Part shown: positions 15,855-56,013 of the stretch, piece after piece
Layout of the letters: every line of letters starts with the position of its first letter
How positions within the stretch are numbered: position 1 is the first letter of the stretch
Source: Bigelowiella natans CCMP2755
Taxonomy: Eukaryota; Protista; Cercozoa
DNA length: 59,463 bases
Reading direction: 5' to 3'
Assembly: GCA_000320545.1 (NCBI GenBank)
Contig: ADNK01002331.1
Coordinates: forward strand, 1-59,463
Made by a program: the position numbers and the translations under genes
The notes under the pieces: model-generated
What the model was told of the DNA's origin: nothing
Seen by the model: only the letters and a program-made list of their open reading frames with translations
The model's database searches: none

Positions 15855-16649
15855 GGCTGATGATTATCCATATACTTAGATTTCGAGAAACAATGTGATT
15901 AACGGTGCACAATCTCAGCAAGTAGTAGCTAAACATGCCACTCTTTCCAAATCAAACATAGTATTCGGGAATTGTCACGGCATGCAATATGTTCGAATGA
16001 AATATCGCAGATGAAAGTGATTCGTTGCTTGCTTTATAAGAAGATGGGAGGTGCTGAAAATCGACGAATATCATCTAAATATTTCATACCAAAGGAAAGA
16101 GCAGCAGCTGAAAAAAAAAGAGGGGGGGGGACCTGCTCTTCTGTTTGGTTTATAGTCGATTTTTAACGACAGTATGAAGAGCCTGTATTTGGATAGTACG
16201 ACAAGGCATTTTTACTACCGTACTATTACTATCAAGGAAAACAAGAAGAGGCAAGAATGCATCATTTGCAATTTGCCATGTTGTCATTATTCATTCATTA
16301 TTGCCTTCATTATTTATCGATCATCATCATTTTTTACCCGGCAAATAACCAAGACCAAGAATAGTTTGTTGCAGCAAGTCTAACTACCTACTACATGCAC
16401 AGAACAGATGGACTACATTTAGACGCAAACGACAGCTAATGTACTGCCATGTATGTGGGGACTTGATTTCAAGTTGTGATAAGACTTTATGTAACGCCGC
16501 TCTGAGTAGAATTAATTTTATATATGTAGTTACTGATTTGCGACAACACTTAAACGTTGTCGCATCTGTACAATGAAGACATGTACCGCAACTGCACTCC
16601 TAGTTACTACAATCGCCCCAAATATCCATCCCGGGCAGATCGGAGGGGT

Positions 16650-16651
<2 letters not shown>

Positions 16652-16715
<64 letters not shown>
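16652..16715. repeat. (AG)n microsatellite in the divergent promoter region upstream of the cyclase gene
   Basis: About 32 perfect dinucleotide units seen directly. Confidence 0.95.
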
Positions 16716-16720
<5 letters not shown>

Positions 16721-16920
16721 GAATAAGTGGGGGGGAACGAGTAGGTTCTTTGGGTTTTCAACCCTCTGAATTAATAGAGTCATAGCCTTCATAACTTAAA
16801 AAATCCTTTGTTTGTTACATATCAAGGAAACTACTTCGTCACGACAAAAAGGATTATCTCTTCAATCTACATTTTAATTGGTTGTTCCTTCTCCAGTTTT
16901 GAGAGGGAAGAGACCAAGAG

Positions 16921-17525
16921 ATGGGAAATCAGCTATCGGAGGAGAATAAGTCGAAAGCGACCACTCTTTTCCGATGCCTTGACCGTGGAAATAAGGGCTA
17001 TCTAGTTCTTGCGGATATGCAAGTAATGCGCTCTGTATCACACCGATTTGCTGAAAAGACGGATATCCAATTGATGAAGGCGGACAAGAACAAGGACAAC
17101 AAAGTCTCGCTCGATGAGCTGATAGCCTACTTCATAAAAAAGAACGTCGATTCTGACGAATTAAACCGTATGTGCGATCATCTCACTCGACGAATGTCTT
17201 CACGGCGAGTGCACAAGACCAAGTGCATGTTAATGATGCGCAGACTAAAACGCCGTGGCCGCGTCATGATTATGGCCATAAATGCATTCCGAGGATCGAT
17301 ATACCCATCTTCAGCCGATTCGTACGCAACATTCTTGCCTCAGATCTTTCTTCGAAGGCTAGCGAAAACAGACTTTCGATGCTTAAATAGGTCGATTTCT
17401 TTCCAAATTTTTTTGCTAGTTATTTATCTTTTTGAGATAAATTCCGATATTGAGGTGTAATACATGCTAGTACTCCGGTTATTGTTAGATTGGTGTTCTG
17501 ATTTCCAGCATGAACAGCTTCGAGT

Positions 17526-17563
<38 letters not shown>

Positions 17564-18226
17564 TGTCTACGTATACAACATACCGGAATTCCTCTCACAG
17601 TTGTTATCCCCCAGCGTATGTACGTTTATATTCCTGTAATAAAGAAACTTGACGATGATTCCTACTACCTCCTATTCACAGTCTTCCGATAAAATCGAGT
17701 TTCTTCGGAGTCTGTGCTTTCGTTGACGTTTCAGGCTTCACAGCTCTTACGGAATCCTTAGCAAAACATGGGCCAAAAGGAGTTGAGATGCTCTGCGCTA
17801 TTTTAGACAAATTCTTTGAGCATTTAGTAGGGGTAGTCGGCTCCTATGGAGGCGATATCATCAAGTAAATTCTAACCTTTCAAATGAATAAACAGTGGTA
17901 ACATAGCACTGTCTCAATAACACACGTATGAGTTATTTTTCATTTAATGTTTTCTCTCTCCTCCTTTCTCCGTGGTCCTCCTAATTGTAATTGAAGGTTT
18001 GCTGGCGACGCACTTTTAATTTTATGGAAAGAAGAGCGCAATGGTGCAAGCGCAGATGCGGGAAAGAAAAAAATAACTGCAGCAGGGAGCAAATTCGCAA
18101 CAATAAAAAATCCTGTTGAGGTAGGTTCGTCATCATTCTTTAACTCCAATCTACTGATCCTTTTTACTCCTACCGAAAAAAAAGTATGATGATAAGAATG
18201 ATGCTCCTATAGCAGCCATCCAAGCA

Positions 18227-18258
<32 letters not shown>

Positions 18259-18672
18259 GGTCGATCATCATTTTGTGGGTAGATAATATTATTTTTACCA
18301 TAGGTTGTGGAGAAAAAGAATAGTAGCTCGAAAAATGGAGACGATAGTGGTAAGGACAACGGGAACGATGTTAAAGCACAACTCGCATTGGCTGCCACTG
18401 CATGTTGTATGGAGTTACAGAGGGAACTTTCTGATTACAAGGCAACAGAAGACGTTACCCTCAATATTCATGTCGGTGTTGGAGCTGGAGAGGTAGTGTA
18501 GTAGTAGTAGTAGTAGTAGTAGTAGAAGAAAAAGAAGAAGAAGAAGAAAAAGGAAATGAAGAAGCAAGTAGCAAGTAGCAGGAGGAGGAGAATGAGGAGG
18601 AACAACGAAGAAGGGGAGTAGTTTAAGGATTTGCTCCTAATTGCAATAAGAATATCGTATTTGTTTATTCAC

Positions 18673-18710
<38 letters not shown>

Positions 18711-19125
18711 TTGAGAAGAGAGAGGGAGAAAGTCCCTCAACATTGTTGTATTAGTCTTCATCTCTCACCATCATCATCATCTATCGTTAATGATCTGTTA
18801 TTCTAATTATAGCTCACAGAAATGATACTGGGACAACAAAACTCGGCAGAGTACATCATCACTGGCCAGCCAATAAAGGTAGTAAGTTGTAGCAGTAACA
18901 TACAGTAATCAATGTTAATACCACTATTTCCATTTTTTGCTTGCATACCATAATTTGCTGCTGATGATGGTGGTGCTGCTAATACTACTACTAGGATATG
19001 GGAGATTCGGAAGGACTTTCTCACTCGAAAGAAGTTGTAATCTCCCCTCTCGTATGGGACTTAATCGGAAGACATCACCTAGCAAAGAAGCAGCGGGATG
19101 TCATGAAATTGTACAGGGTGGGAGA

Positions 19126-19160
<35 letters not shown>

Positions 19161-20059
19161 ACAGTAGTACTATTAGCAGTAGTTGTAGCGATGCAGCAAC
19201 CAGAAGAAAACGTACAAAGATAATGATAATAGTCAAGGCTATTATATTATCGAGAAGAGTATGAGGCAAAATTGAGCCACAAAAGAATATTATTGCAAAC
19301 GGAAGAATATGCATTATTCATATCACCATTCCTTAACCATTTACTTTTCAACATGCACACACACGCACATATCATTGTGGGGGAAATCAATGGTGGAACA
19401 TAGCCAAAACCAAGTAGTGTAAATTCCGAATGTAGCCCTAATGGAGGGTTATTACAAATTGATTATTCATTCTTTCACCACCACCACCACTACTCATATG
19501 AATACATTAGGCTTGCCATGTGGACAGTGAGGACAAAAAAAAAGCCAAATTCGTAACTCTTCGCGATTTCTCTAAAGAACTTTGGGAAGAAAAAGAGAAG
19601 TTGGTGAAAAAAACAGTTAGGAAGACTGAACTTACGGCATACGATATCACTCGATTTAAGAGTTTGATTCCATTGCCTATCTATAACACCCTCCGGTAAC
19701 AAATAGTAGTAGTAGTAGTAGTAGTAGTAGTAATAAATAGGAAGAAAGTATCTCTCATATAATAGTAGTAGAGCAGAAGTAGTACCAGCTTACCCATATA
19801 CTACGCATTCTCTAACTAGTTCATATTTCGTGTTGGAGATGTGAAAATAACAACGAATAAAAGTAAATTCATTTTCGAATGAATGACCGTTGCATTCATG
19901 ATGTTGCTGTTCATGTTGTATTATGTATGTCGTCCACGTCAGTACCCATCCATCCATTCATCCATTCATATATTCATTCATCGATCGTACCCTTCCTCCT
20001 TCAATATTTCATGTTCTAGCTCCGGGAAGAATAGCTTCCAATCTAGTATGCGGCAGGTA

Positions 20060-20095
<36 letters not shown>

Positions 20096-20448
20096 AAGTT
20101 ACCTGATTGCTTGCAAGTGTCAGTTAGTTATAGCGGCAAGTAGAAGCAACGTCGTCGTCGTCGTCATCATCGTTATCGTGCCTGCTATTCGACAACGAAA
20201 ATATAATGACAATTATGGCATAACAACCCATCGAATGCATCATCATCATCATCAACAGCAGCAGCAGCAGCTGCAGCTGCTTGTTTTGTGGTCGGTCGGG
20301 GGGTCGTAATAATGGAATATTCTATGAGTAGTACTTTTCACCCTACTATATATTTTATATTCGTTAATATATTACTCCTAAATAATTTTCTGTTTTTCTC
20401 CCTTAGTCCAATATCTTTTCACCACATACACGTATAACACAAGCATAT

Positions 20449-20481
<33 letters not shown>

Positions 20482-21171
20482 TAGGTTTCCGTGTTGTTTG
20501 TCAATGTAATCGGGCTACCACTTACCAGCGAACGTGCTTCTAGCAATTTTACGGTACATCAAGCACAGATTATGATGGTCATGCTACAGAAGATCATTCG
20601 AGACTTCAGAGGCATCGTCAACAAGCTTATGGTAGTAGTAGTAGTAGTAGTAGTAGTAATAGTAATAGTAATGTGTGAGATAATGATGATAATATTAAAC
20701 AGCAAGCACATGGTCATCATTATCATGAACAACTATTGTCATCTTCTTCGTCAATAACAACACCACCTCCATCATAATCATACTCACATTACCATCATCG
20801 TTATAATTATTGTAATCATCGAATTAGGTCGACGATAAAGGCGTAGTACTATTAGCGATGTTTGGGTTGCCGCCGTATAGTCCTGAGCACAGCGCTTTGA
20901 GAGCATGCCTAGCATCACTCATGATTCAAACACAGATGGAAAGTGCAAGAGAAAGGTAGTAGAACAACTACTAGTTGTAGACTGATGATGATATAGTGGA
21001 TTTCGATGTGGCGGAGGAGGAGGAGGAGGAGAGGAGGAGGAGGAGGAGGAGGAGGAGGAGGAGGAGCTGTATATAGAGCAACTCGTAGAGAAGGGTGATA
21101 AGGGAAAAGGAAGATAAAGAGAGCAGCATCAACTAATGAAATTAAGATTCCAATTCATACGCAAAATCATT

Positions 21172-21206
<35 letters not shown>

Positions 21207-21416
21207 AAGAATGATGGTGGTACTAAGATAAATACTTCGTTTGAGCCTTAGAGTTAATAAAGAACATTTGGTGTCAGTATGCTTCTGCAATGTGCTATGG
21301 GAATTACGTACGAAAACGTATTCTGCGGGGTTGTCGGAAGTACTCAAAGGAGGGAATACACGGTGCATAAGTAGTAGTAGTAGTAGTAGTAGTAGTAGAA
21401 ATCGCTGTCCATATTA

Positions 21417-21485
<69 letters not shown>

Positions 21486-21955
21486 TATTAATAATATTAA
21501 TAATACCACTGATGTAACATATAAATGCAACGAGAATCTTACTAACGCTGCCAACAACAACCCACGAAGGTGATGGGAGATGCGGTCAACCTAGCAGCAC
21601 GCTTGATGGGAGTCGGGTGCAAACGCATAGGTGATAATGACGACGACATTATGTCTGAAGTGTTGGTATTATCATCATCATCATCATCATCATCATCGTC
21701 ATTATCATCATAGCCTGAGTAACAATGCAGGTGTTGATTCATCATTTGATGTTGTTGCTCAGGTGATGCTGGCGGTATCGTGATGTGCAATGATATGGTA
21801 GTAGTAGTAGTAGTAGTAGTAGGTGTTCTTTATCGTAGCAAGAAAACAAATAATTAGAACAACTATATTTTCTCAATACTGTTTATGTTAACATGTATTT
21901 CATGCATAATGCCAAGGCTTGTCCATTGTACGAAGAAATAATGATATTCACTCAA

Positions 21956-21994
<39 letters not shown>

Positions 21995-22074
21995 GTTGTA
22001 AAAATCATCGCATTTGCTATATGCTTTAGCATGTCGATGTCTCTGACGTATTATTATTAATTTTACTATATATA

Positions 22075-22109
<35 letters not shown>

Positions 22110-23832
22110 AATATTATGATCTATCATACTAGGTCAAAAAAGAAGTTGCAAAAATTCTCATAACGAAATCGCTCCCTCCGGTCAAGTTAAAAGGCAAGAA
22201 AAATCCAACACAGGTAACAATCCGGCTAATTTCCTTATTGCTTTTAGTCCAATGAGTTGGGTTATCAATAAATATGGAGAAAAGAACGTGCTTAGACTGC
22301 ATTATTCTTAATTCGTACTACTTGCTCATCATCATCATCATCACAGGTATTTCAGATACTAGGTATTCAGTCGAAGAAGACGATGATGAGATTAGGTACT
22401 AAGAAGTAGTAGTTGTAGCACTTCACGTGTTCTTTATCACCATAGGCCATTACATAAGATTTGATGACCACCAACACTTAGGCAGTATTCGTTCACAAAT
22501 TAAATGACTGCCCAGGCTTAGCACCTAACATTGAGGATATGAATAATAAATAATAGGAACTCAGGGCAAAGAGTTGGTCGCTTTATCTACTTCCAGCATT
22601 GCAAAGATGCGACAGAAAGAACATAACAGTATAAGAGCAGCCTTTGACCATATCCTTCGTAGTCCGAGCAATGAGAAAAGTGGTGGTAAAACTACTCACT
22701 GTCTGATAGTACTCCAAGGTGTTATGGGTTGCGGTAAGACGGCACTATTACCTCAAATCATAGCAATTTGTGAGGAAAAGGGGCTATCTGTCTTGTCAAA
22801 CACGGAAGTCGTAATTGTAAAAGGCATAGGGAAATCGCAAGCAGGTGCTGTTTTGAGTGTTCTATTGATACTAGCTTGCTGTTTGTGGAAACAGTTCATT
22901 ATGACCACCGTTAATTCGTATTGTAGGAGGGTGATGAATGAGGGTATTTTATGTGTGTTGTTATGATGATTGATACACTGTGTGCTGATATTGATGACAA
23001 TGATATTATAGCATCGTTGAAGCGAACAGCTAACAACAAACCTTTCTCTGGGTGGCTCCGTATCTTCACCGAAATCCACGAACACCATACTACGCGTACC
23101 CTTAGACATGTAAGTGATAAATATGACAAACATATCACATTGAGACAGAAGTAGAAGATTGCTGGTCACGTGTATGTGTGTATACGTGTGCATATATGAT
23201 GATGAAATGAAGGAACAAGTTCAGTAGTACTCGACTGATTCTGAACTGTCTGTGTGTTATGAAGAGAGGAAGAGAAATATAGGAAGCATCACAACTACTA
23301 CCCCCACTTCCTCGTCGTTTTCCTCCTCCTTCTATATCATCATCTTCTCCTTTGTAGGTATCAAAAAGTAGAAGTAAAAAGGATGCAATCAAGATTAAAG
23401 ACGCCTTGAAAGACTTGCTGGAATGGAGAGGGAATGTGCAATCCGATTTCGACTTACTAAGTGACTTGTTTGAAGCTAAAGCAGAAGTGGTAATGATGAT
23501 AAGATATGCTACTTTTGCTCCTCCCTCTGCAATAACAAACAATGGTTGTATTCAATACTTGTCGTCAACCAGTCAATCAATCACACATTTACATATTACT
23601 TTCATCGTTACCAGGAACGTGAGGAGCGAGCCAAGGATAACGAATTAAAATCTCCTCACGAAAAATCTCCAACGCGCATGACAGTGGAGTTCCTCATGGA
23701 TATTTTTGGCAAAGCTGACGATAAGCTACTTGCAGAGACATCAACGGAGAAACTCAAAAGGATTAATCAAACGATCAAGTGAGTCAGTCCGTCAGTATGA
23801 TGGATTCTTATGTTGTACAGGAGATACACACC

Positions 23833-23879
<47 letters not shown>

Positions 23880-24333
23880 GAAGATGAGAATGAGAAAAGG
23901 CAAAAAGGGATGCAGAAATAGGATAATTTTGAATTCATTACATTAAAAACACTAACCATCATCATCATCATCATAAACTTTCCATCAGAGGACGTGTGAC
24001 GAATTTGATCCTGCCCAATTCGAGCGATAATGAGAAGAAAAAGGCGGAGGGTCTCAAAGAGCGGGTCACCAATGCTTTCTTGGAAGTGCTCGCCGGTGTG
24101 AGTGATTATTTTGAGAAAAGTCTTGGCAAGCCTCTGATTCTACTCATGGAGGATTGGCATAAATTTGACCGTAACTCTAAAGAGCTCCTTGCAACTGTCT
24201 GCAAAAGTAGTAATCATAATAACACTAGGTTTCAGTTTGGGATAGATAATAATATAACAATCGTTTTGTTCCGAGAAAATTATATGAAATATAGACTATT
24301 GCTTTTTGTATTTGAGATGGTTCTCTTTTTTGT

Positions 24334-24367
<34 letters not shown>

Positions 24368-24556
24368 CTATATCAATTACCCAACGATGTGTCAATACCA
24401 TTAGCATGATCATCACCACCATCACTACCATCACTACCATTACTATCGTAACCATCAATATAAGGTATCCGAAATTGCTACGTTTTCGTAACTACAAGAC
24501 CCACAATACCCGATGTTCGCGCAGAGCTTGAGGCAGGACGACTACATAAAATCAAT

Positions 24557-24594
<38 letters not shown>

Positions 24595-26641
24595 TTTGAT
24601 AAGTCCCTTGTTAGGGGTGCTAGATGTAAGGAATTACGATGTCACATTCCATCCTTTCAATCTTCTTCTTTTCAAGTTTCTACTAAACCATGATGATGAC
24701 GATGATGATGCTTTGTGTCTTCTCAGGATCAGGGAGTAGAGCCACTAATGATTCTTATGGAACCTTTGAGCGAGATTGATTCTATGAGTATCATTGCTGA
24801 TTGTCTTAAAATGGACCCACAGGTAGGTAGGTAGGGTGTAGGTAAGGTAGTTCGTGGCAGCACTCAGTATATAGAAGTAGTTTACATCTAGTTACTGCTA
24901 AATCTGCCTCTTCGTCTTGCTTCTTCTCCTTCTCCTCCTTCTCTTCAATAGACGCCATTGGTCGGAGATATTGCTTGGATGGGTAACTAAATATCAGAAA
25001 GGAACAAGAAAAACAAATCAAAGGGAGGAGTAGTAGTCTAAGGAAAAGAGCGTTATCGCTGACTGATCGTCATCCTCTTCTTCATCATGCTTACATCTTG
25101 ACATTGTGACTATCATCATCATCATCATCATTTGTTTGTACTTGTCTTTAGTTGAAGGGAACCCTCTTTTCATCTCGCTTTGGTGTTCACAACTGATGCG
25201 GAAGGGCATGGTCGATAACTACGGAGAAGTGAATGCGAATATGGACTTCCAATCGTTACCAATGCCGCATGCGATACGGCACTATTATGTCACTCTGTTT
25301 GACATGTTTGGTCCAACAAAGCAGGGAATCCTTCGTTTGTTGAGTCAGGCAGATACAGATCTCAATCCCACAGATATATGTTCATGTCTTGAGGTCGATG
25401 ATAACAAACGAAAAAGTAGGAGAAACCCACAGATATATCAAAACCACTGTGAGTCGCTCGTTAGAGTCAATGTTCTTCATCGATTTAGAAAGCTTGGCAA
25501 ACAGGTAGGATTTGAATCTTAGAAAATTAGTGTGATGATATGGTGACTAGTACTTTTCCCTTCTCAATCGAAACTGATGCAAGACTGCTGCTGTCACAAA
25601 ACTTAGTCGTCAAGAAGTGTATTATTGTGTTTTCGTAGCACACCACTATTTTTACCACATTGTTTTTCGTTGATACTAAAAAAACATCATGAGCATGTAG
25701 TCGTCGTATACCTTTATGGCGACGACATACATCATGTGCCCCATCATCTCAGCCACCACCGACAGACACCATTGTACTATTGCAGCGACGAGCTCCAAAA
25801 CACAAACGTTCCATTTCGAAAGCATCAGCTAATATTCTACGTGCTGCGGCGATGTCTGAAAGACGAAGATACCACCAGTCAATATCAGTGAAGGGAGAAA
25901 TTCCATGCACATTAGTAGCTGGTGGCAACAATAGCTACAGGTAGAAATAGTAGTTCTAGCAATGGTTGTAGCTACCGCATGCTGCTGCCGCCTATCATGA
26001 AAAGAAAATGAGTGAAGTATAGAAAACGATGGGTATGTAACAGTGAATGTAATGATTAATTTGGACTGCTAATAGTCATCCCAATAAATTGTTATTTCAC
26101 ATTGCTTAATGATAACATTTTTTGTTTGTCCTCATCATAGCTATCAGCTGGAAAGTCAAAACTTTCGTCGTGTAATACGTGCGATGATGCTCGATTCACA
26201 AGTTGGTAGTTTAAAGAAAGCTCTATCGAAACTTGGCACTTGTCGAAAGGAGTCGCAGAATCCACGATCTGAGCTCCAAAGCGACAGAATATCCGAATCT
26301 AAAACCCGAACGTAAGTTATACTTGTATCCCTCCAAATGTTATGAATTAATAAGAATATCGGTATATATGCATATTATATCGAAGTGTCTGTAAATTGAA
26401 CGTAATCTACCTGAATCGAATTATCAAATTCAAACTTGCAAATTGTGTGACGGTATCATCAAACTTACATAATCTAGAAATAATGTTTTGACATTTCTGC
26501 CGCATTATAGAGCTTTCTTCGTGTCACTGTCGAACAACTTTAAGTTAAATATATTATCACATTTTTAGTGTCGTCATATTTCTTTACAGAACTATAGTAG
26601 ATGATGAAATCATCCGTCCGAGGAACAATAAAATTGGATAA
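16921..26641 (+). CDS. EF-hand-fused soluble adenylyl cyclase-like protein (class III, ADCY10/sAC type; two cyclase domains plus P-loop NTPase), predicted N-myristoylated
   Basis: Exon 1 (16921-17390) has MGNQLS and EF loops DRGNKGYLVLAD and DKNKDNKVSLDE. C1: FVDVSGFTALTE...GGDIIK|FAGDALL (17682-17864, 17997 onward) and IHVGVGAGE. C2: VLFVNV, VNKLM|VDDKG...FGLP, VFCGVVGSTQRREYT|VMGDAVNLAARLM and VKLKGK. Walker A is GVMGCGKT (~22718-22741), Walker B is LILLMEDWH and GNPLF lies near 25157. The 3' end is uncertain (stop at 26641, or alternatively 26805). Confidence 0.9.
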
Positions 26642-26884
26642 ACTAATTCTCGCAGATCTTCATGTTGATTTATTTTCCGTTCCACCTTAGGTTCAGCTTC
26701 CAGGAACATAAAAGGGCGACATCGGTCCTATCTGGGAGTTTTAATAGTCCCTCTACAGTTAAGAAACGCCGTGCTAGCATAAGGGCGACGGAATTAGAGT
26801 TATAACTGCTGTTCATTGCCCACACGGTGCTGATGACATCTAAGCATCAAAGGTTGATAAATATTTGCGTCTATCATCGGTGAT

Positions 26885-41678: not shown

Positions 41679-44600
41679 CATACACCAGCATGAATATAAA
41701 TAAATACATAACAGCAAAACTCAATATATAGTGTGTTGTGTGAGAGATATCGGTACACATTATGTATGATCGAAGCAGCAGCAGCAGTTGCTTAAATATA
41801 TGTGCGTGCTTTTTTATTAAAGTCAAAATCCTCTGTAAATGAGAAATCGAGTTTATTGTATTCACGGAAATGGGAGAACTCCTTTCAAACTCCAAACCTG
41901 ATAAGGCCGTTGATAGTGGCCTCTTCGTTCATGCGAGACTTGGCTTCATCGATCAACCTTTGCTTAAGTCGTTGCTCCTCAGCATCCTTACCTTCGAGAA
42001 GCTTCCGCATCTTCTCTTCGTATTCGGCTTTGAGTTTATCAGCATCGATGTTGTTTGAAACGTTGCCATCCCCTGTCTGGATGCTGTTGAGAACCTGCTC
42101 CTTGACGAGCTCCGAGGCAGTGTCTTTCTCTTTATCTTTTGCGTTGTTTCGCTTGGATTCCATATCAGCCTTCATCTCCGCAAGTCTCTTCTCTCGTGCA
42201 GCTTTACGTTTCCTGGCGAGTTCCTGGAGACGCTTCTTGCGCTGTTCAGCAGCCCCGTCGCCCTCTCCAACCTCCATAGCTAGTTGGACTTCGGACTCCT
42301 TTAGGATACCAATGGAGTTGTCATCTGAGACTCCAGACGAAGAAATGAGCTTTTGGAACTCCAACTCGTCTTGGTGCATTCGTTCTTGCTCGAGCCTTAA
42401 CTCTTCGGCGTGCTTGCGTTCCATTTCGAGCCTCTTCTGCCGCTGACGGTCAACCTTGTCTTGAAGTTCCTTAATTCTCTTGAGGCGCTCCGCAGCTGCC
42501 TTAGCCTCTTCGTCATCCTCGGCGTCCTCGAGCGCGTCTGTGATGTCCACCAGCCCATTTTTAGATTCATCCTCAACCTTCTTTAGCTCATCTTCTGCCT
42601 TCTTAAGCTCCTCAAGGTCTTTCTTCTCCTCCTCCGTCTTTTTCTCCTCGACAGCGCCTGCAATCTCACCAGCAACCTCGAGCTTGGCTTTCTCCTCTGC
42701 TTCCTTGCGAAGCCTCTCCTCCAGCTCCTTTTTCTTTGCTTCGTGCTCCTTCTTGAGTTCCTCGATCTTATCCTTTAGCGCTTTGATGGCGGCGTCATTC
42801 TCCTCGTCCTTCATCTTGCTCTGTAACTTGAGCTTCTCGAGATTACCACGGAGAACCTTGGCCTCGCTGTCTAGTGACGAGTCGACGATACCGGCAAATG
42901 GATCTGTCGGATCGAATGGCTCGGCTCTCAGAAGAGTTTGCGACTTCTCGTCAAAAACGAAGCCACCCTTCATTCCCAGTAGGCCGGAGAGTACCTTGGC
43001 CATGTCAGGATTAATGCCACGGAACAGATTAGTAGACTTTGCTGCAACTTCTTCCTCGCGCTTGTTGAGAAGCTCGTTGGCCACATGATCGTGCTGGTCA
43101 GAAGCATTTTGCGCCGCGTCATCGAGCGTCGACTTAAGTTTAGATAAGTCTCCTCGTAGCTTGAGGCACTTTTCGCCGATGACCTTGGCTTTCTTGATCA
43201 TACGAAGGTGCTGTTTTTGCTGCTCGCGTTTGAGCTTATCGTCGCCACCAGGTGTGTTTGCTGCGGCCTTCTTGATGGCAGCAAACTTCTCGTCAAGCTT
43301 TGCAATCCGCTTCAAGACTTCGTTGATGCTGAAATTGAAGGCGTTCAGCTTCACGACGAGAGCGTCCTGAACCTTCTTCTCCATGAAATCAAGGTCGCTT
43401 AGAGCCTTGATGATAGGGACGCCAACTACCTCAACATGTGCACCGAAGCCGCGACGTCGTGTCCTTTCCTGTTCAATCCCACGGAAGAGGTTCATAATGT
43501 GCTGCTGAAGAATGCGGCATTGGTTGCGAACCTCAGTGATGGTGTAATCCTCATTACGGATCGTGTTGATCGCATTAGGCATGTCGCTGGTGCAGATTTG
43601 CCAAAGTCGTAAGCGCATATCTTCGAGCCGCCACTGAAAAGATTTGCGTGCGGATATCTCCGCCAAGACGAGACGGCGAACTGCCTCTCCAAATCCTTCG
43701 CCCGAAGTCTTAAGCTGCACGTTCATCTTGACGGCGAGGACAGATTTGAGATGGTCCGTCTCCTCGCTCATGTGCTTGTAGAAGGAGCGCAAATCCTCTT
43801 CTTGCGACTTGAACTGTTGCGTGAAGTCCTCACGAGAAAGCTCCAGCTGCTTGTATAGAGAATGGAAGTCGAAGTCTTCGGTCGAGACCTGATTCTGCCA
43901 CTCGTACATGTGAGCTTTCTCCACGCCCTCACCATTGTCGATCTTAGATTTGACACTTCTCTTCGACGCATCTCCCTGTATAATCTTTTCCCCTGCTATG
44001 GGTGGATCTTTTTCCATGGAGGTAGATAGAATGGGTTGAGTAACATCGAGATCTTTTGTCACGGTCTTGTTGATGACCGGCTTTCCAGGTTGTACGACCC
44101 CTGCTGCTGGTACAGAAACACCTCCGGTAAGGTCAAGCTCTTTGGGGTCTCGTAGCCCTTTGGATGTATCCTTCTGCTGGACGACAGAGCCCTTAGAATG
44201 GAAGTGCCACAGGTTAAGGCTATTGCTTTTCGCCTTCGTACGGTAGCGAGCGTTGGCAGCGTTGGCGGTGCCCCATCCGGTGTTACGGAAGACGTAGGAG
44301 CCAATGATCAGACCGAGAAGGACAGCGAGAACTAATCCCGCCATGATACCAATCATTGTCCAGTCGGGCGTCAGGAGTAGGTCGTCCTCCTTGCTCACGC
44401 CGAGCGAGTTTAGATTCTCAATCGTGAATGGCAAAATGCGCGCTTCGCCTGGGCACTGCGAGGTCGAAGGTAAGACACGGTAGATCGTGCTCCGCGAGGT
44501 GGTGGCTGAGGCATCAGCGAATACGTATGTCCCTGCCTGCTTAAACGTATATGCAAAGACACTGACTGACGTAGCATTTGCCTGCAGCCTCGACTTAAGT

Positions 44601-47600
44601 TCGCGAAATGCTCCATGGTCGAAGTTCTTCGGTTCATTGAGCAGGTCGCTCTCTAAATAGACGGGATAGCTAGTGCCCGTAACGGAAAAAATCACACCTT
44701 CCCCTTCAATGAGACAATGAAGTGCCGGAGAGAAGGAAGCGGTGACGGAGCTAGACGTATCAAGAAGCTGGCGTCCACCAGCATTGAATTCTTGAACGCT
44801 GTTCCACTCATCGAAACTCGCTGTAGCATTAACAGGCAGCGTCATGGCAACATAATCGAGCGTCTGCACTCGCCGAGTGTACTCATCCATGGCGAGAGCT
44901 GAGGCTGTGATCGGACAAGCCTGTTTAATCTTGTTCAAGAACGCGTCGGTAAGGGAATATGATCCTGAAATCGTTCCACCACTCACTTCAGAACTGAGCA
45001 TGGTACACGTGGCGCCAGCGCAGTCGGAGTAATCGACGAAGCCGGAGAGTGCCGACATTTCGACCACACAAGAGGCCACACCCGAGCTGGAGTCATTATA
45101 AATGTAAATGGTGTGGTCGACGAGCACAACAACAGGTTTCGAGGCGCGGCAAGTTGCATCACAGATTGTGTCAAGATCAGGCGCATCATTGCATTGGCAG
45201 GTTCCAAGCGTGGGCGAGAAGGTACCACCAGCGCTGCCGCAGTCGCCGGCTTCTGTACAGTCGTAGGTGGGGTCCTTGCACGATCCATCGGACTTACGAG
45301 CTTGGCCAGACCGGCAACGGTCATAAACCTTTAGTTCGCAGTCCTGATCGCCATCAACGTTTGAGCCGTCATCACCTTGAGTGTCTGTGTACGTGTAGCC
45401 ACCTTCGCAAAGACACGACGAGTCAAATGCCTGGAATACACGGTTCCTTCCTATGCAATTGCAAGTCGTTGCCCCCTCTGAGGATTCGGAAGTTGACGAG
45501 CAAGAGAAGCATCCAGACTGACCCTTTTTGTTGTTATACGTGTTTTTGGGGCAGAGCTCGCACGTCGTCGCGTCGACAGCTCCAGTACTATTACTATATG
45601 TTCCTTCCGGACAAGGAAGGGCCATCGTAGTTGCCTTTGGACAGTAGTATCCCTTCGGGCATATCATGCCGCCTTGGAAGTCGTACAAAGGAGAGGGGTC
45701 TGAAGCTCCCCCAGTGCAGACGTATCCTGCGTCGCAGTCCATGCAAGTCTTCTCGCTCGAGTTGACCTGCCACTTTCCAGGCAGACAATCTGCGCATGTC
45801 GTGACGAAGGACGTCCTGTTCACGACATCGAGGGAGCGCGTACCGTTGCCGCAGGGAATCGGGAATACTGACCCCAGAGGACAATAGTTTGGACCGTCGC
45901 AGTATATCGGTTTTGTGCTGTTAGCGGGACAGTACCAGCCGGGTGGACACAGATTTGCGACCTCAGACCGCGGAGGGCAATAGGAGCCGCCAGGACAATT
46001 AGTAGGCTGTGACGAGTTCTTGGGGCAATAAGTACCTGCCCAGCAAGCCAGCGGAACATCGGTGGCGTCAGGGCAGTAGAAACCGCCAGGACATGAGCGA
46101 CATTCTGTGCGGGACCCAGCACCTGTAATGTCCTGGAAGGTTCCTGCAGTACATGGGATACTTTGGTTCACGCCCTTTGTACAGTAGGCTTTCACGGGAC
46201 ATAAGTGCGGACTTAGCGAGGAGATTCCTTCGACATTGCACAAGTAACCCTTTGGACAAGTGTCGCAGTCAGAAAGGTTTTTTCCTCCCGTGGCTGTGCG
46301 GTATGTTCTCGCGGGGCAGAGAATAGGGCGAGTCTTAAAAGGACAGTACTTCCCAGCGGGACAGGGTACAGGCAGGACGCTACCTGCATCACATTGAAAG
46401 CCAGCAGGGCAATCAGTACAGTCATCGACTCTCTCTCCATAAGTTGCGTTGCGATAAGTATCGTCCGGACAAGGAACGGCGGCTGGGATACCGCGTGGGC
46501 AGTAGTGGCCTTTGGGGCAAGGGGTTCCACGTCCGGGGACATTGGGCGTCGCCTCGTAGTTTTTGATCGTGCAAATGTAGCCGGCAGAGCAATTACCAGA
46601 AATCTGTCCATCAGTACAATACTGGCCAGCAGGACAGGCCTGGCACTGAGCGACGTTTCCGAGCCCCGCCATCGCGCCGTAAGTTCCGTTGGGGCAGAGG
46701 ATGTGGTACTCGGTACCGTTGGGACAGTAGGACCCTACAGGGCACTCAATGGTCTGGTTTGAGTTATCCGGGCAGTAGAAGCGTGCTGGGCAATACTTGC
46801 ACTCGGCAAGCCCAGGTAGATCAGAGTAGGTACCGCCCGAGCACTTAATGGCCATCGAGGAGCCGGGAGGGCATGAGTATCCTGATGGGCAGAGATTAGC
46901 TGATGAGTTCCCAGTGATGGAGCCCTGAGGACAGTAGTAGCCTGCAGTACAGTTGTTCGTGGGCGCTCCCAGACCAGGCGTTTCACAGAAACTCCCCTCA
47001 GGACAAGAGACGCACGAGATCTCGGCGAGGGCGCCCTTGTGCGGATTGTACTTGCCTGGAGAGCAGGGCACTGGGGCCTGAGTTCCATTCGGACAATAGT
47101 GGCCAGCAGGACAATCACCATACCCTGTCCATCCACCGCCAACTCCCTTGACTACAGTGCCGTTGGGGGTTGGGGAGGATGAGCCTTGGCCGCAGAAATA
47201 GCCGCCAAAGCAATCGCCGTTACCAGGCTCTGTCAAGTTGAGCTGGTTGCAGTATTTACCAGCAGGGCAGAGAGTGCAGTTGTTGACGCCGGGTCGACGA
47301 AGTTCGTTACTCCAAGTACCCTTGGGGCACGGGTCTGGGTGTACAGAGCCAGCGGCGCAGTAATAGCCAACAGGGCAGGGTTTTTCAACTACACTAGTCA
47401 TATTGGTTTCGTCGCAGTAATATCCAGCGGTGCAGGCGTCACAGACTCCTCGACCAGGGTTAGCGTTCCAAGTCCCCACCCCACAGTTTAGCTCTACCGT
47501 CGTTCCCTCTGGGCAATACTTCCCCGGGTGACATTGTCGACCCGTTGTGCCGTCTACAGGGGTTGGTGTTTCTGCACGACTGAAGCAAATGTAGCCCGGT

Positions 47601-49109
47601 GAGCACAGACCAGAGTTGTTGCTGTTGAGAGCGGAAGCTGCGGCCTCAGCACAGTACTGTCCCCTAGGACAGTCTAGGCAGTCGGACTGAGCCGTATTTC
47701 CTTTACCACTGCTAAAAAGACCTTTTCCGCAAGCGGTGGGTAGCGAAGAATTGGCGGGGCAAAAGAAGCCCTCAGGACACACATTACCAGTAACCGCATC
47801 CGTAGGAGTGGCACTCGATGAGCCCCCTAGACAATAGTAGCCTTTCTGGCAGATTCCAGTAGGCTCTGTAAGCCCATTACTGGCACAATAGCTACCTCCC
47901 GTGCAGTTCATGCAGTCCGCCTCTCTTGGGAGCTGGTATTTGTCACTGAAGGTCCCTTTTGGGCACGGGTATTGGGTACGGAACGTAGTGTTTTCAAGAC
48001 AATAATATCCTGGAGCGCAAACAGTCATGTTCTCATTTCCGGCTCCTTCAGCGTAGAAACCTGCGGTTGCAGACTTGCAAGTGCCTTTCTTCAGCTCATC
48101 CTGGTACGTACCAGCGGGGCAGGGGACTGGCCATCCTGTTCCCAAAGGGCACTTGTGTCCCCTCGGACATTCAAGCGTGGGTGTGACGGTACCGTTAAGG
48201 CAATAGTAGCCCTCAGTGCACAGGATTGACGAGTTGACTGAAGCCACGCCGGAACGATCACAATAGTAGCCGGAAGGGCACGGCTTGCAGGTTCCAAGAT
48301 CCTTCGCTCCCATTGATGGGGAATAAGATCCGGGAGGACATGGGACGGGATCCTTGGTTGCATTGGGGCAGAAGTGGCCCGTTGTACATTCCAGATGCGT
48401 TGGCGTTACAGCCCCCTGATCGCAATAGTATCCTTCGTAGCATTTACCACTAGGCGCACCGAGCCGGAAGTCTTGGCAGAATGCACCACCCAAGCATGGA
48501 ACTTGAGCAGGGCTACCGGGTGGGCAGTAGTTCCCTGGAGTACACTGGCCCCCGACGGTGGCGTTTGGGTTTTTGAAGGCCGAGCCGCCTGTGCAGTAAT
48601 AACCTGCCTCGCAAGGTCCAGTCGCATTTCCAAGACCGGGAGTCTCGCAGTACATACCAGCTGGGCAGTCTATACAATCCTCGGGGCCATCACGGCCTAA
48701 AACCGGATTGAACTTCCCAGGACCGCACGGGTTTTCATTGTAGACACGAGTACCGATGGGGCAGTAGTGACCCTTAGGGCACTCATGTGGCTGGCTGGCG
48801 CTTTGAGGACAGAAAAAGCCCGGGGGGCAAATTGAACATGCGGATGAGCCAGTGACGTTCGTGTAGTTGCCTGAATCGCATGGAATCATCTCCCAAGATC
48901 CCTCGGGACAGTAGTTTCCAGCCTGGCAGATATCACCACCCACACCGCCTGATGGCGTTGGGGTGGTCGAGTTGCCAGTGCAGTAGTATCTAAGTGAAAG
49001 CAAGAGGCTCAGAACAGTGTTCAAAAACTCTAACTCGAGCGCATATACACACATACACATAAATATTTGAACACGCCTATATGCATCGCATATTGAGTGT
49101 ATATGTTTC

Positions 49110-49160
<51 letters not shown>

Positions 49161-49541
49161 GAAAGCATATTTTGGAGGAAATAAATAAGCAATGAGCAAG
49201 TCGCACCCTGCACTGCATTTGCCAGTAGGTGCCCCGAGGCCAGAGGAACCGCAGTAGTGGCCCTTGGTACAGGATCGGCACTTCGACCCGTCCACATCCA
49301 TTGAGGAGTTAGACCACTTTCCAGGCGGGCAGTGAGTCGGCTGCGCCGAACCGGAGGGACAGAAACTCCCTGCTGGGCATATATGATTCACAGCGTTTGC
49401 TGTTTTACCGTATTTATCTTGAGATCCAGGAGGGCAGTAGTAACCCTGCTGGCATTCGCCTGTTGGCTGCTGAGCCCCGAGTGTGTCGCAATACTTGCCG
49501 CCAGTGCCTAACAAATGGCCGTGATGAGAGAGGGGATATTA

Positions 49542-49598
<57 letters not shown>

Positions 49599-52500: not shown

Positions 52501-53528
52501 ATGCTCACTGTATGTGCCTCCCGGGCACGGAAACTGGAAAGCGTGAATAGTTCCAGAAGGACAGTAGTGGCCAGGAGGACACATATTGTACGTATCCCCG
52601 CCACTGTAGCCGGAATCACAAAATCGGCCAGCTGGGCAGGTAACACACTGAGAAAGGAGCGTAGCGCCACTCGAGAGGCCAACCGTCCCAGCAGGGCACG
52701 GGTATTGCCATCCAGAAACGGTTCCAACCTTACAGTAGTATCCCTTTGGGCAGGTCTTAGGTGTTGTCATACCATTTTCGTCGCAGTAGGTTCCTTCGGG
52801 GCAGAGCTGACATCCCTGCTCCTGGGTTTTCGCGCCCGTAGTTGTGCCGTAGAACCCCTTTTTGCAGCTGCACAAGCCCAAATAGCAAGATACCTTAAGG
52901 TTGTCATCCCAGCCTCCATAGGGGCACCATGACGCCCTAGGGCAGTTGTTGAGAGTCGAGGACGTCAGACCTGTACCATTGCAGTACTTTCCGCCTGGGC
53001 ATGGTGAGCACTGGACGGCTCCAGCGTCGCTGTACGTTCCAGACTCGCACACTTTCTTCAAACCGGATCGGCATTCATGCCCGGCCTCACAGAGCGTACA
53101 CGCTGTTTTGTTTCCAACAGAGTAGTATTCTGCCTTGCACCTCCGTGGGCTCATATTGTTATTGGGGCATTCGTAGCCTGGTGGGCAAGCCTTGCACTGA
53201 GCAGAGGGAGTATCTGTGTAGGAACCGAGAGGGCAGGGAGTCATAGTGCCTGTCGTCGTGCATGCATAGCCTAATGGACATGGAAGGCATTTAGGCTGGC
53301 TTCCGGTGGAATAGTAGCCTGACTGGCACGGGGTCGAGGTTGATTGCTTTATGTCAGGGCACTCGTGGCCAGCCGCGCAAGCTGTGCAATTTGCAGCTCC
53401 TCCTGTAGCATATGTTCCACGGGGACATTTCTCCAAAGAAGCTGTCATGGCGTTGGGGCAGCGGTATCCTGAAAGTTTATTTGTAAATGTCAGCAATTAA
53501 CACATTCACACATTCACACGTAAACACA

Positions 53529-53559
<31 letters not shown>

Positions 53560-55519: not shown

Positions 55520-55567
<48 letters not shown>

Positions 55568-55965
55568 TGTGTAAAAATATAGTATACCTGCAGGACACTC
55601 AAGAGGTGCCGTGAGATTTCCAGAAGGACAATATTTACCCTATTATTATAAATTGAGATAAGGACGTTGACAATGAATGCATCATCGGTACAAAAATTAG
55701 AAGCAGGTCTTTGATGCCGCAAGATATACTACACTCGACGGTGATATCGTGGCAATGGGATACGTACCGCTGGACATTGTGTGCATCCAGTTGCACCTGA
55801 TTGTAACGACATAGTTGTTACCAATATGCAGCTCATTTACAATGATGTGACAAAGATGTGCAAATTTCTTCTGTATCAATAACCTGTAGTCGCGCCATAG
55901 GTTCCTGGTGTACATTCCTAAAGAAAAAGGGAACAGTATTCGTTATTCAATTTGAAATGTATCTT

Positions 55966-56013
<48 letters not shown>

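What the first reader, a model, noticed from the sequence alone, without database searches (positions are those of the whole stretch)
16921..26641. Myristoylated, EF-hand-fused soluble adenylyl cyclase: a candidate self-contained Ca2+-to-cAMP transducer
Seen: MGNQLS (Gly2/Ser6 myristoylation consensus), an EF-hand pair, then a complete sAC-type C1/C2 catalytic set. That set includes both metal-binding Asp (VDVSG, FAGD), the adenine-specifying Lys (DDKG) and Thr (EYT), and the transition-state Asn/Arg (VNLAAR). A P-loop NTPase follows. Established: mammalian ADCY10 has no EF-hands or lipid anchor and senses Ca2+ and bicarbonate at the catalytic core. Inference: this is a membrane-tethered (possibly flagellar) cyclase regulated by its own Ca2+ sensor, perhaps through a recoverin-like myristoyl switch.
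Basis: partly seen in the sequence, partly recalled or inferred. Interest (0 to 1): 0.8.

Follow-up and report, generated by a model that had tools for sequence, protein, structure and literature searches.

The report
EF-hand-fused soluble adenylyl cyclase
The alga Bigelowiella natans expresses one gene that joins a lipid-anchor signal and a calmodulin-like calcium-binding module to a soluble-type adenylyl cyclase, a combination I found only in chlorarachniophyte algae, which could turn a calcium signal directly into cAMP, although no function has been tested.

Summary
The window is Bigelowiella natans nuclear DNA, and the gene is JGI model Bigna1 79176 (P0001, 1264 aa).

- **Fusion is real.** Spliced transcript contigs from three runs in three studies join the EF-hand exon to the cyclase exons at exactly 17390|17682 and continue into the P-loop exon. 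In the ortholog from Amorphochlora amoebiformis (1460 aa), residues 1-231 lie in a single exon. That stretch holds the MG start, the EF pair, the linker and the first half of C1, so the fusion does not depend on splicing.
- **Catalytic core is intact.** All catalytic residues are conserved, and the folded core matches human sAC (Foldseek E 2e-32).
- **The EF pair is a real but weak match.** It scores just below Pfam's cut-off. EF2 keeps its Ca2+ ligand positions in both species. EF1 is degenerate in both.
- **A new feature.** A conserved helix with net charge +12/+13 lies between the EF pair and the catalytic core.
- **The architecture is rare.** No other sAC relative examined carries EF-hands, including at least four paralogous loci in this genome.

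Myristoylation, Ca2+ control, a myristoyl switch and flagellar location remain inference. It is not a recoverin-type protein. I class it as a new variant of a known kind. The scan had not noted it on other DNA.

The parts
16648..16826 (+). 5' UTR intron containing an (AG)32 microsatellite. The UTR exon upstream ends at about 16647.
   Evidence: The loose end of the X15 contig before 16826 equals window 16617-16646. GT at 16648 and AG at 16825-16826.
16921..17390 (+). Coding exon 1 (aa 1-156). It holds the MGNQLS myristoylation motif, the EF-hand pair, a polybasic helix and the first helices of the sAC core.
   Evidence: 100% identical to P0001 residues 1-156.
16924..16938 (+). G2-S6 of the N-myristoylation consensus. 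MG[NS]QLSEEN is 8/9 identical in the ortholog.
   Evidence: An NMT gene is present in the genome.
16981..17016 (+). EF1 loop DRGNKGYLVLAD. It is conserved but lacks ligand side chains at loop positions 3, 5 and 9.
17083..17118 (+). EF2 loop DKNKDNKVSLDE, a canonical loop. Oxygen donors at positions 1, 3, 5, 9 and 12 are kept in the ortholog (DRDGDRRVSIED).
17188..17304 (+). Polybasic amphipathic helix, aa 90-128. It has 13 K+R and no D/E; the ortholog has 12 and none.
17682..19117 (+). Exons 2-6 (17682-17864, 17997-18120, 18304-18492, 18813-18878, 18995-19117), encoding catalytic domain C1 (aa 157-385). They hold the metal-binding D172 and D222 and K218 (= human K95).
   Evidence: Joints, exon chain, PDB alignment, AF2 model.
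19511..20056 (+). Exons 7-8 (19511-19695, 20020-20056), the C1-C2 linker (aa 386-459).
   Evidence: Contig record lengths fix a 37-nt exon. Identical to P0001.
20485..22213 (+). Exons 9-14 (20485-20631, 20828-20955, 21278-21362, 21570-21630, 21763-21797, 22133-22213), encoding catalytic domain C2 (aa 460-638). They hold K512, T579, N586 and R590.
   Evidence: (Pfam Guanylate_cyc E 7e-13).
22347..24205 (+). Exons 15-20 (22347-22395, 22557-22844, 23012-23109, 23358-23489, 23615-23778, 23989-24205), encoding the STAND/AAA_16-type P-loop NTPase. Walker A is within 22718-22744 and Walker B within 24131-24154.
   Evidence: RNA joints are confirmed only up to 22790.
24464..24550 (+). Probable exon (VFVTTRPTIPDVRAELE) that the public fgenesh model skips. 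Its exact ends are not determined.
   Evidence: tblastn of the Amorphochlora ortholog. The ortholog has IFVTSRPTIPDIDTQLD at the gap in the BLASTP alignment.
24709..26805 (+). C-terminal exons of the public model (about 24736-24816, 25148-25504, 25783-25938, 26136-26312, 26692-26802) and the stop at 26803-26805. No RNA check was made here.

Best explanation
This is one expressed gene of Bigelowiella natans encoding a sAC (ADCY10)-type class III adenylyl cyclase. The enzyme has gained a roughly 128-residue N-terminal control module.

Shown:
- The module is, in order, an N-myristoylation motif (MGNQLS), a calmodulin-lobe-like EF-hand pair with one canonical loop (EF2) and one degenerate loop (EF1), and a helix of net charge +13. 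That helix runs directly into the first helix of the catalytic core.
- The core keeps every catalytic residue, so it should make cAMP from ATP.
- A STAND P-loop NTPase follows the core.

Inferred mechanism:
- The protein is myristoylated on Gly2. It is held on a membrane by the lipid together with the polybasic helix, the bipartite signal used by Src and MARCKS.
- Ca2+ binding at EF2 changes how the EF pair engages the adjacent basic helix.
- Because that helix is continuous with the catalytic core, the change alters cyclase activity, membrane attachment or both.
- Ca2+ would then be converted to cAMP within one polypeptide. This is an in-cis version of calmodulin-AC1/AC8, NCS-AC8 or GCAP-RetGC, and resembles CDPK or NOX5 in logic.
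For: Fusion:
- Transcript contigs of 2932, 3158 and 4122 nt, from three runs in three studies, carry the GT..AG joint 17390|17682 and the following joints through to 22790.
- The exon chain fixed by those contigs is the only one that keeps the frame. It reproduces database protein P0001 for aa 1-954.
- The Amorphochlora ortholog P0270 is colinear at 44% identity. It encodes aa 1-231 in one exon, L018:3001-3693.

True N-terminus: an in-frame stop lies 18 nt upstream in the same exon.

Myristoylation:
- The PS00008 pattern is met in both species.
- The first nine residues are 89% identical, against 33-45% for most of the rest of the module.
- An NMT gene is present.
- No transmembrane segment is predicted.

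EF pair:
- Pfam E 2.5e-6 for this protein and 2e-4 for the ortholog, over the full-length profile.
- A two-species profile against PDB finds 148 sequences at E <= 0.01; all 60 listed are calmodulin-type EF-hand proteins or fusions containing one, best 1.1e-5.
- The AF2 model of aa 1-130 shows two helix-loop-helix units with beta-bridges at L28 and V62, loop position 8 of each EF-hand.
- EF2 ligand positions are kept while 6 of 7 non-ligand loop positions changed.

Basic helix: net +13 and +12 with no acidic residue, hydrophobic moment about 0.55, helical in both models.

Cyclase:
- D172, D222, K512, T579, N586 and R590 align to the human sAC catalytic residues.
- They are invariant or nearly invariant in 43 relatives.
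- Core pLDDT is above 90. Foldseek to human sAC gives E 2e-32 and TM 0.8.
Against: - No experiment bears on lipidation, Ca2+ binding or regulation.
- The EF pair scores below Pfam's curated cut-off.
- EF1 cannot bind Ca2+ canonically.
- EF2 of the ortholog has Asp rather than Glu at loop position 12, and neither species has Gly at position 6. This may mean low Ca2+ affinity or Mg2+ binding.
- The N-terminal module folds with only moderate or low confidence (pLDDT 37-60 in the 660-residue model, 69 on its own).
- The one test of EF pair against basic helix gave no verdict.
- Mammalian sAC responds to Ca2+ without any EF-hand, so a Ca2+ response would not by itself prove the EF pair is the sensor.
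- Only two species support conservation.
Confidence: 0.55

Rival explanations
1. The fusion is real, but the EF pair is a structural or docking module that does not sense Ca2+. It would serve as a constitutive membrane-targeting or oligomerisation head. Any Ca2+ effect would act at the catalytic site, as in mammalian sAC, or through free calmodulin binding the basic helix.
For: - EF1 is degenerate in both species.
- EF2 lacks Gly at loop position 6, and the ortholog has Asp at position 12.
- The Pfam score is sub-threshold.
- EF1, the non-binding loop, is the best conserved part of the pair at 75%, as expected of a protein-contact surface.
- The basic amphipathic helix looks like a classical calmodulin or acidic-lipid binding site.
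Against: All five side-chain ligand positions of EF2 keep oxygen donors across two genera, while most other loop positions changed. That pattern is expected if metal binding is under selection.
Confidence: 0.3
2. The enzyme is a guanylyl cyclase or a dual-specificity cyclase, like the sAC-related soluble guanylyl cyclase of Dictyostelium, rather than an adenylyl cyclase.
For: From established knowledge, sAC homologues are not all adenylyl cyclases. No assay was done here.
Against: The base-specifying pair is Lys512/Thr579. This is the same as human sAC K334/T405, not the Glu/Cys pair of guanylyl cyclases.
Confidence: 0.05
3. The fusion is an artefact, arising from read-through or chimeric assembly of an EF-hand gene and a neighbouring cyclase gene.
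For: The public model is ab initio (fgenesh) and is wrong in its 3' half.
Against: - Three independent transcript assemblies carry the same joint.
- Exon 1 already contains the first helices of the sAC core.
- In Amorphochlora the EF pair and half of C1 share one exon.
Confidence: 0.02

Closest known systems
Mammalian soluble adenylyl cyclase (ADCY10), catalytic core structures 4CLF/4USU
   Same: - Tandem C1-C2 in one chain with identical catalytic residues.
- K95 equivalent present.
- Followed by a P-loop STAND NTPase.
- No membrane helices.
- Best sequence match (E 7e-38) and fold match (E 2e-32) in PDB.
   Different: - About 128 extra N-terminal residues holding the myristoylation motif, EF pair and polybasic helix.
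- A 45-residue low-complexity insert in C1.
- The bicarbonate-site Arg176 is Gly347 here. Only 2 of the 43 aligned rows have Arg there, including both vertebrate rows shown.
- No TPR detected in the tail.
Ca2+ sensors that regulate cyclases in trans: calmodulin with AC1/AC8, NCS proteins (HPCAL1) with AC8 (bioRxiv 10.64898/2026.04.19.719435), GCAPs with retinal guanylyl cyclase
   Same: An EF-hand protein, often N-myristoylated, confers Ca2+ sensitivity on a class III cyclase. It often does so by binding basic amphipathic regulatory segments.
   Different: - Here the sensor and the candidate target helix are covalently part of the cyclase.
- The cyclase is of the sAC type, not the membrane type.
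- There are two EF-hands, not four.
Enzymes with in-cis EF-hand control: CDPKs (kinase, junction helix, calmodulin-like domain) and NOX5/RBOH
   Same: A catalytic domain is fused to EF-hands and an adjacent helix that can serve as an intramolecular target. Many CDPKs are also N-myristoylated.
   Different: - The catalytic domain is different.
- The EF module here is N-terminal and is a single pair.
- No homology beyond the EF-hand fold.
- The intramolecular contact is not shown (one search gave no verdict).
PH-domain-fused sAC-type cyclases from metagenomes (P0064, P0202-P0206)
   Same: A sAC-type core with a different candidate membrane-targeting module fused on; in P0064 the PH domain lies N-terminal to C1.
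   Different: They carry a PH domain rather than a lipid anchor plus EF-hands, and they imply no Ca2+ sensing.

Membership tests
sAC/ADCY10-type class III adenylyl cyclase | Two catalytic domains (C1, C2) in tandem in one soluble polypeptide | tested here: met
   The alignment to human sAC covers C1 and C2. The AF2 core has pLDDT above 90. Foldseek gives TM 0.8 to 4USU. No transmembrane segment is predicted.
sAC/ADCY10-type class III adenylyl cyclase | Catalytic set: two metal-binding Asp in C1; Lys and Thr for adenine and Asn/Arg for the transition state in C2 | tested here: met
   D172, D222, K512, T579, N586 and R590 align to human D47, D99, K334, T405, N412 and R416. They are conserved in 41-43 of 43 relatives.
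sAC/ADCY10-type class III adenylyl cyclase | P-loop STAND NTPase (AAA_16) after the catalytic core | tested here: met
   Walker A (GCGKT) and Walker B (LLMED) are present. AAA_16 scores E 3.5e-6 at 28 bits, under the 32.6-bit cut-off in my scan, but PF13191 is listed in the precomputed annotation.
sAC/ADCY10-type class III adenylyl cyclase | Bicarbonate site (human Lys95 and Arg176) | tested here: inconclusive
   The Lys is present (K218). The Arg is Gly347 here and Ala in the ortholog. Only 2 of 43 rows have Arg at that column, including both vertebrate rows shown.
sAC/ADCY10-type class III adenylyl cyclase | C-terminal TPR-like region | tested here: not met
   No TPR family at E <= 0.01 in P0001 or P0270, although many bacterial relatives carry TPR families. 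The 3' gene model is imperfect.
EF-hand pair (Pfam PF13499, calmodulin-lobe type) | Profile match over the whole pair at the curated threshold | tested here: inconclusive
   28.2 bits against a 30-bit cut-off, E 2.5e-6, profile positions 2-66 of 67. The ortholog scores 22.1 bits. PDB profile search: all 60 listed of 148 hits are calmodulin-type EF-hand proteins or fusions containing one, best E 1.1e-5.
EF-hand pair (Pfam PF13499, calmodulin-lobe type) | Two helix-loop-helix units paired by a short beta-bridge at loop position 8 | tested here: met
   AF2 model of aa 1-130: H7-21, loop, H30-44, H48-52, loop, H64-73, with bridges at residues 28 and 62. Block-mean pLDDT is 76-81 over residues 11-50 and 61-80, but 59 over residues 51-60, the start of the EF2 loop. 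Foldseek top hits are all EF-hand proteins, but only at E >= 0.012.
EF-hand pair (Pfam PF13499, calmodulin-lobe type) | 12-residue loop with oxygen donors at positions 1, 3, 5 and 12 | tested here: inconclusive
   EF2 meets it (D, N, D, E here; D, D, D, D in the ortholog). EF1 does not (D, G, K, D in both). Actual Ca2+ binding is not testable here.
N-myristoylated proteins | Met-Gly start fitting G-{EDRKHPFYW}-x(2)-[STAGCN]-{P}, and an NMT enzyme in the organism | tested here: met
   The pattern is met in both orthologs. The start codon is fixed by an upstream in-frame stop and by RNA contigs. NMT_C matches at E 3.5e-40 in the genome.
N-myristoylated proteins | Myristate actually attached to Gly2 | not testable with these tools
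   Needs metabolic labelling or mass spectrometry.
NCS/recoverin-type Ca2+-myristoyl switch proteins | Free-standing protein of about 190-200 aa with four EF-hands, whose N-domain sequesters the myristate | tested here: not met
   There is only one EF pair. Residues 78-128 are plain helices without EF loops, and the module is fused to the enzyme.

The most novel reading that the evidence does not exclude
The N-terminal module is a Ca2+-operated myristoyl-electrostatic switch built into a soluble-type adenylyl cyclase. At rest, the lipid and the +13 helix hold the enzyme on a membrane, possibly the flagellar membrane. When Ca2+ binds EF2, the EF pair captures the basic helix. That releases or re-orients the catalytic core and changes cAMP output. 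The result would be a one-protein Ca2+-to-cAMP transducer confined to chlorarachniophytes.
Probability: 0.15. Interest if true: 0.7.

Novelty: new variant of a known kind. Interest (0 to 1): 0.5.

Why it matters
Ca2+ and cAMP signalling are normally coupled through separate proteins, such as calmodulin or NCS proteins acting on membrane cyclases. In mammalian sAC, Ca2+ acts at the catalytic site. A sAC that carries its own EF-hand sensor, a lipid anchor signal and a polybasic helix would show a third solution, analogous to what CDPKs are for kinases.

It would also give a compact natural scaffold for studying how an N-terminal regulatory helix controls the sAC core, or for engineering one. In addition, it is a first handle on cyclic-nucleotide signalling in Rhizaria, where I found no published work on these enzymes.

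Tried and rejected
- **Pfam on single cyclase exons** found nothing because the pieces are too short. PDB phmmer on exon 2 did work.
- **Exon-chain enumeration.** The first run timed out. A second run gave no solution because I had the aligner's plus/minus 2 ambiguity wrong. It was solved by reading the sequence.
- **The search for homologous proteins.** With P0001 region 1-160 it found only P0001 itself. With the 160-residue piece as query it found nothing, although a 229-aa fragment (P0002) exists. That blank is uninformative.
- **The protein-atlas search** gave only short bacterial cyclase clusters at 0.82, below a useful score.
- **Complex prediction**, EF pair (1-90) plus Ca against the basic helix (91-130): no verdict. 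This is not evidence either way.
- **Foldseek of the N-terminal model** gave only EF-hand proteins, but at E >= 0.012, so it is not significant alone.
- **Literature.** Six searches found no paper on this protein or on an EF-hand-sAC fusion. The library is incomplete.
- **Rejected readings.** It is not a recoverin/NCS member, because it has one EF pair. It is not a gene-model chimera. I did not conclude that bicarbonate regulation has been lost, because the Arg is absent from most of the family.
- **Quick tree**. It places the two chlorarachniophyte proteins with a choanoflagellate protein and sequences of unknown origin (one from Tara metagenomes) (SH-aLRT 94, careful search unfinished). I draw no origin claim from it.
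Full report
**What the window is.** The region is intron-rich eukaryotic DNA full of microsatellites. A protein search with one cyclase exon returned a 1264-aa database protein, P0001, that is 100% identical. A source names it jgi/Bigna1/79176/fgenesh1_pg.60_. The window is therefore Bigelowiella natans, a chlorarachniophyte alga (Rhizaria).

**Gene structure and RNA evidence.**
- Assembled transcript contigs of 2932, 3158 and 4122 nt, from three runs in three studies, lack the introns. They carry GT..AG joints at 17390|17682, 17864|17997, 18120|18304, 18878|18995 and 20955|21278. They also show a micro-exon at 21763-21797 and joints at 22213|22347 and 22395|22557. Each contig runs from the 5' UTR (16826) past 22790.
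- Using the contigs' own coordinates as length constraints, only one exon chain keeps the frame open.
- That chain, extended, reproduces P0001 exactly for aa 1-954 in 20 exons.
- After aa 954 the public ab initio model departs from what the ortholog supports. It skips a probable exon encoding VFVTTRPTIPDVRAELE at about 24464-24550. The model's stop is at 26803-26805.
- The ATG at 16921 is preceded by an in-frame TGA at 16900-16902 in the same exon. A 5' UTR intron lies at 16648-16826. MGNQLS is therefore the true N-terminus.

**Note on method.** I sent no joined spliced model to any search tool. Exons were searched by reference. The joined CDS was built only inside scripts, from window coordinates, to check the frame and its identity to P0001. 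Full-length searches used the database protein P0001 by its id.

**The cyclase.**
- Residues 125-660 match human ADCY10 at E 7e-38.
- D172, D222, K512, T579, N586 and R590 align with human D47, D99, K334, T405, N412 and R416. K218 aligns with the bicarbonate-site K95.
- These columns are invariant or nearly invariant in 43 relatives.
- The human bicarbonate-site Arg176 is Gly347 here. Only 2 of the 43 aligned rows have Arg at that column, including both vertebrate rows shown, so this says little.
- An AlphaFold model of aa 1-660 has pLDDT above 90 across C1 and C2. A disordered 45-residue insert sits in C1.
- Foldseek places the model on human sAC structures (E 2e-32, TM 0.8), ahead of membrane cyclases.
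- A P-loop NTPase with Walker A and Walker B motifs follows.
- No transmembrane segment is predicted.

**The N-terminal module.**
- Residues 9-72 match the EF-hand pair profile over its whole length (E 2.5e-6, 28.2 bits against a 30-bit cut-off). They match troponin C and calmodulin lobes in PDB (E 3e-5).
- A profile of the two orthologs finds 148 PDB sequences at E <= 0.01; all 60 listed are calmodulin-type EF-hand proteins or fusions containing one.
- An AlphaFold model of aa 1-130 (mean pLDDT 69) shows two helix-loop-helix units. Beta-bridges lie at L28 and V62, loop position 8 of each hand, which is the hallmark of a paired EF-hand.
- EF2 (DKNKDNKVSLDE) is canonical. EF1 (DRGNKGYLVLAD) lacks ligand side chains at positions 3, 5 and 9.
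- After the pair come a short helix and then a long helix, aa 90-128, with 13 basic and no acidic residues.
- Weak local phmmer matches (E 0.08-10) to relatives without an extension all fall at about residues 125-151 here and near residues 3-24 of those proteins, which suggests the canonical sAC N-terminal helix begins at about residue 129. The added module is then about 128 residues, and exon 1 already contains part of the cyclase.

**Conservation.**
- The 229-aa hit P0002 belongs to a cluster with a 1460-aa protein, P0270. NCBI lists it as a hypothetical protein of Amorphochlora amoebiformis, another chlorarachniophyte.
- P0270 is colinear with P0001 at 44% identity.
- Identity by segment: the first nine residues 8/9, the EF1 loop 75%, the sAC N-helix 72%, and the rest of the module 33-45%.
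- In EF2, all five ligand positions keep oxygen donors while six of seven other loop positions differ.
- The basic helix keeps net charge +12 in the ortholog.
- In the Amorphochlora genome, residues 1-231 lie in one uninterrupted exon (L018:3001-3693). That stretch runs from the MG start through the EF pair and linker to FAGD in C1. The fusion therefore does not rest on any splice.

**How common is the architecture?**
- Of 2201 proteins matching the C1 exon, nearly all of the best 150 start C1 at about residue 30-90, so they have no extension.
- None of the 120 best full-length relatives has an EF-hand family in its precomputed annotation.
- A local phmmer of the N-terminal module against all 280 fetched proteins finds only the two chlorarachniophyte proteins.
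- Pfam scans of 20 relatives with N-terminal extensions find no EF-hand. One has a PH domain.
- B. natans has at least four more sAC-type loci, on contigs C1262, C461, C711 and C3389. None matches the N-terminal exon and none has an EF-like ORF nearby.
- Six literature searches found nothing on this protein or this fusion.
- Limits: only sAC-type relatives were surveyed, not all class III cyclases, and only two chlorarachniophytes are represented.

**Mechanism.**
- Shown: one mRNA, one protein, an intact catalytic set and a conserved N-terminal module.
- Inferred: Gly2 is myristoylated. The motif fits, NMT is present, and the N-terminus is unusually conserved.
- Inferred: the lipid plus the polybasic helix bind a membrane.
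- Inferred: Ca2+ at EF2 changes the contact between the EF pair and the basic helix. Because that helix leads straight into the catalytic core, the change would affect activity or location.
- The only test I could run of the EF-helix contact gave no verdict.
- My odds: fused protein 0.97; active adenylyl cyclase 0.8; myristoylated 0.65; EF2 binds Ca2+ 0.6; Ca2+ regulates activity or location through the module 0.45; recoverin-type sequestration of the lipid 0.1; flagellar location 0.15-0.2.

**Comparison with known systems.** It is a member of the sAC/ADCY10 family by every catalytic and structural test. It has no detectable TPR tail and no Arg176. It works like Ca2+-sensor-regulated cyclases, but in cis. 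The trans systems are calmodulin with AC1/AC8, NCS proteins with AC8 (bioRxiv 10.64898/2026.04.19.719435) and GCAP with RetGC. Its logic resembles CDPK or NOX5. It is not an NCS or recoverin member.

**Verdict.** This is a new variant of a known kind, present in public databases only as an unnamed predicted protein. Interest is moderate (0.5).

Noticed in passing
window 24464-24550: The public fgenesh model (P0001) jumps from 24205 to about 24736 and skips a probable exon, VFVTTRPTIPDVRAELE. This is the STAND 'TTRP' strand after Walker B, and the Amorphochlora ortholog has it. The real protein is therefore longer than 1264 aa.
   Followed up: partly
window introns starting at 18493, 18879, 19118, 19696, 20632, 20956, 21363, 21798, 22396: Nine of the first 19 introns carry (GTA)n/(TAG)n trinucleotide runs at or within about 10 nt of the donor. 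At 20632 and 21798 the repeat starts exactly at the donor GT, with 9 and 8 copies. Each copy offers another GT donor, and in one frame a TAG stop.
   Followed up: partly
window 16573-16902: The 5' UTR has an intron with an (AG)32 microsatellite. If the transcript starts far enough upstream, a uORF from ATG 16573 would, after splicing, end at the TGA 18 nt before the main ATG.
   Followed up: no
G000 contigs C1262:6440-7894, C461:159165-160492, C711:20331-22956, C3389:17494-17745 (loci L014-L017): B. natans has at least four further sAC-type cyclase loci. None has the EF-hand exon.
   Followed up: partly
proteins P0064, P0202-P0206 (metagenomic): Another sAC-type lineage carries a PH domain. 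The sAC core has therefore gained a candidate membrane-targeting head more than once.
   Followed up: partly
L018:3001-52886 (Amorphochlora amoebiformis): The ortholog spans about 50 kb in 55 or more small exons, against about 10 kb in B. natans. Its introns hold tandem near-copies of exon pieces: aa 658-669 matches six places at 21120-21636, aa 443-459 three places, and aa 1204-1215 six places. Intron positions near the 5' end are not shared between the two species.
   Followed up: no
window 18037-18120 and 18304-18357 (aa 232-277): A low-complexity Lys/Ser/Asp-rich insert sits inside C1. It is disordered in the model (pLDDT 40-46), shorter in the ortholog and absent from human sAC.
   Followed up: no
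window 44001-56000: GC content rises to 0.50-0.56, against 0.36-0.45 in the first 30 kb. This lies in the region of the neighbouring giant gene that another note covers.
   Followed up: no
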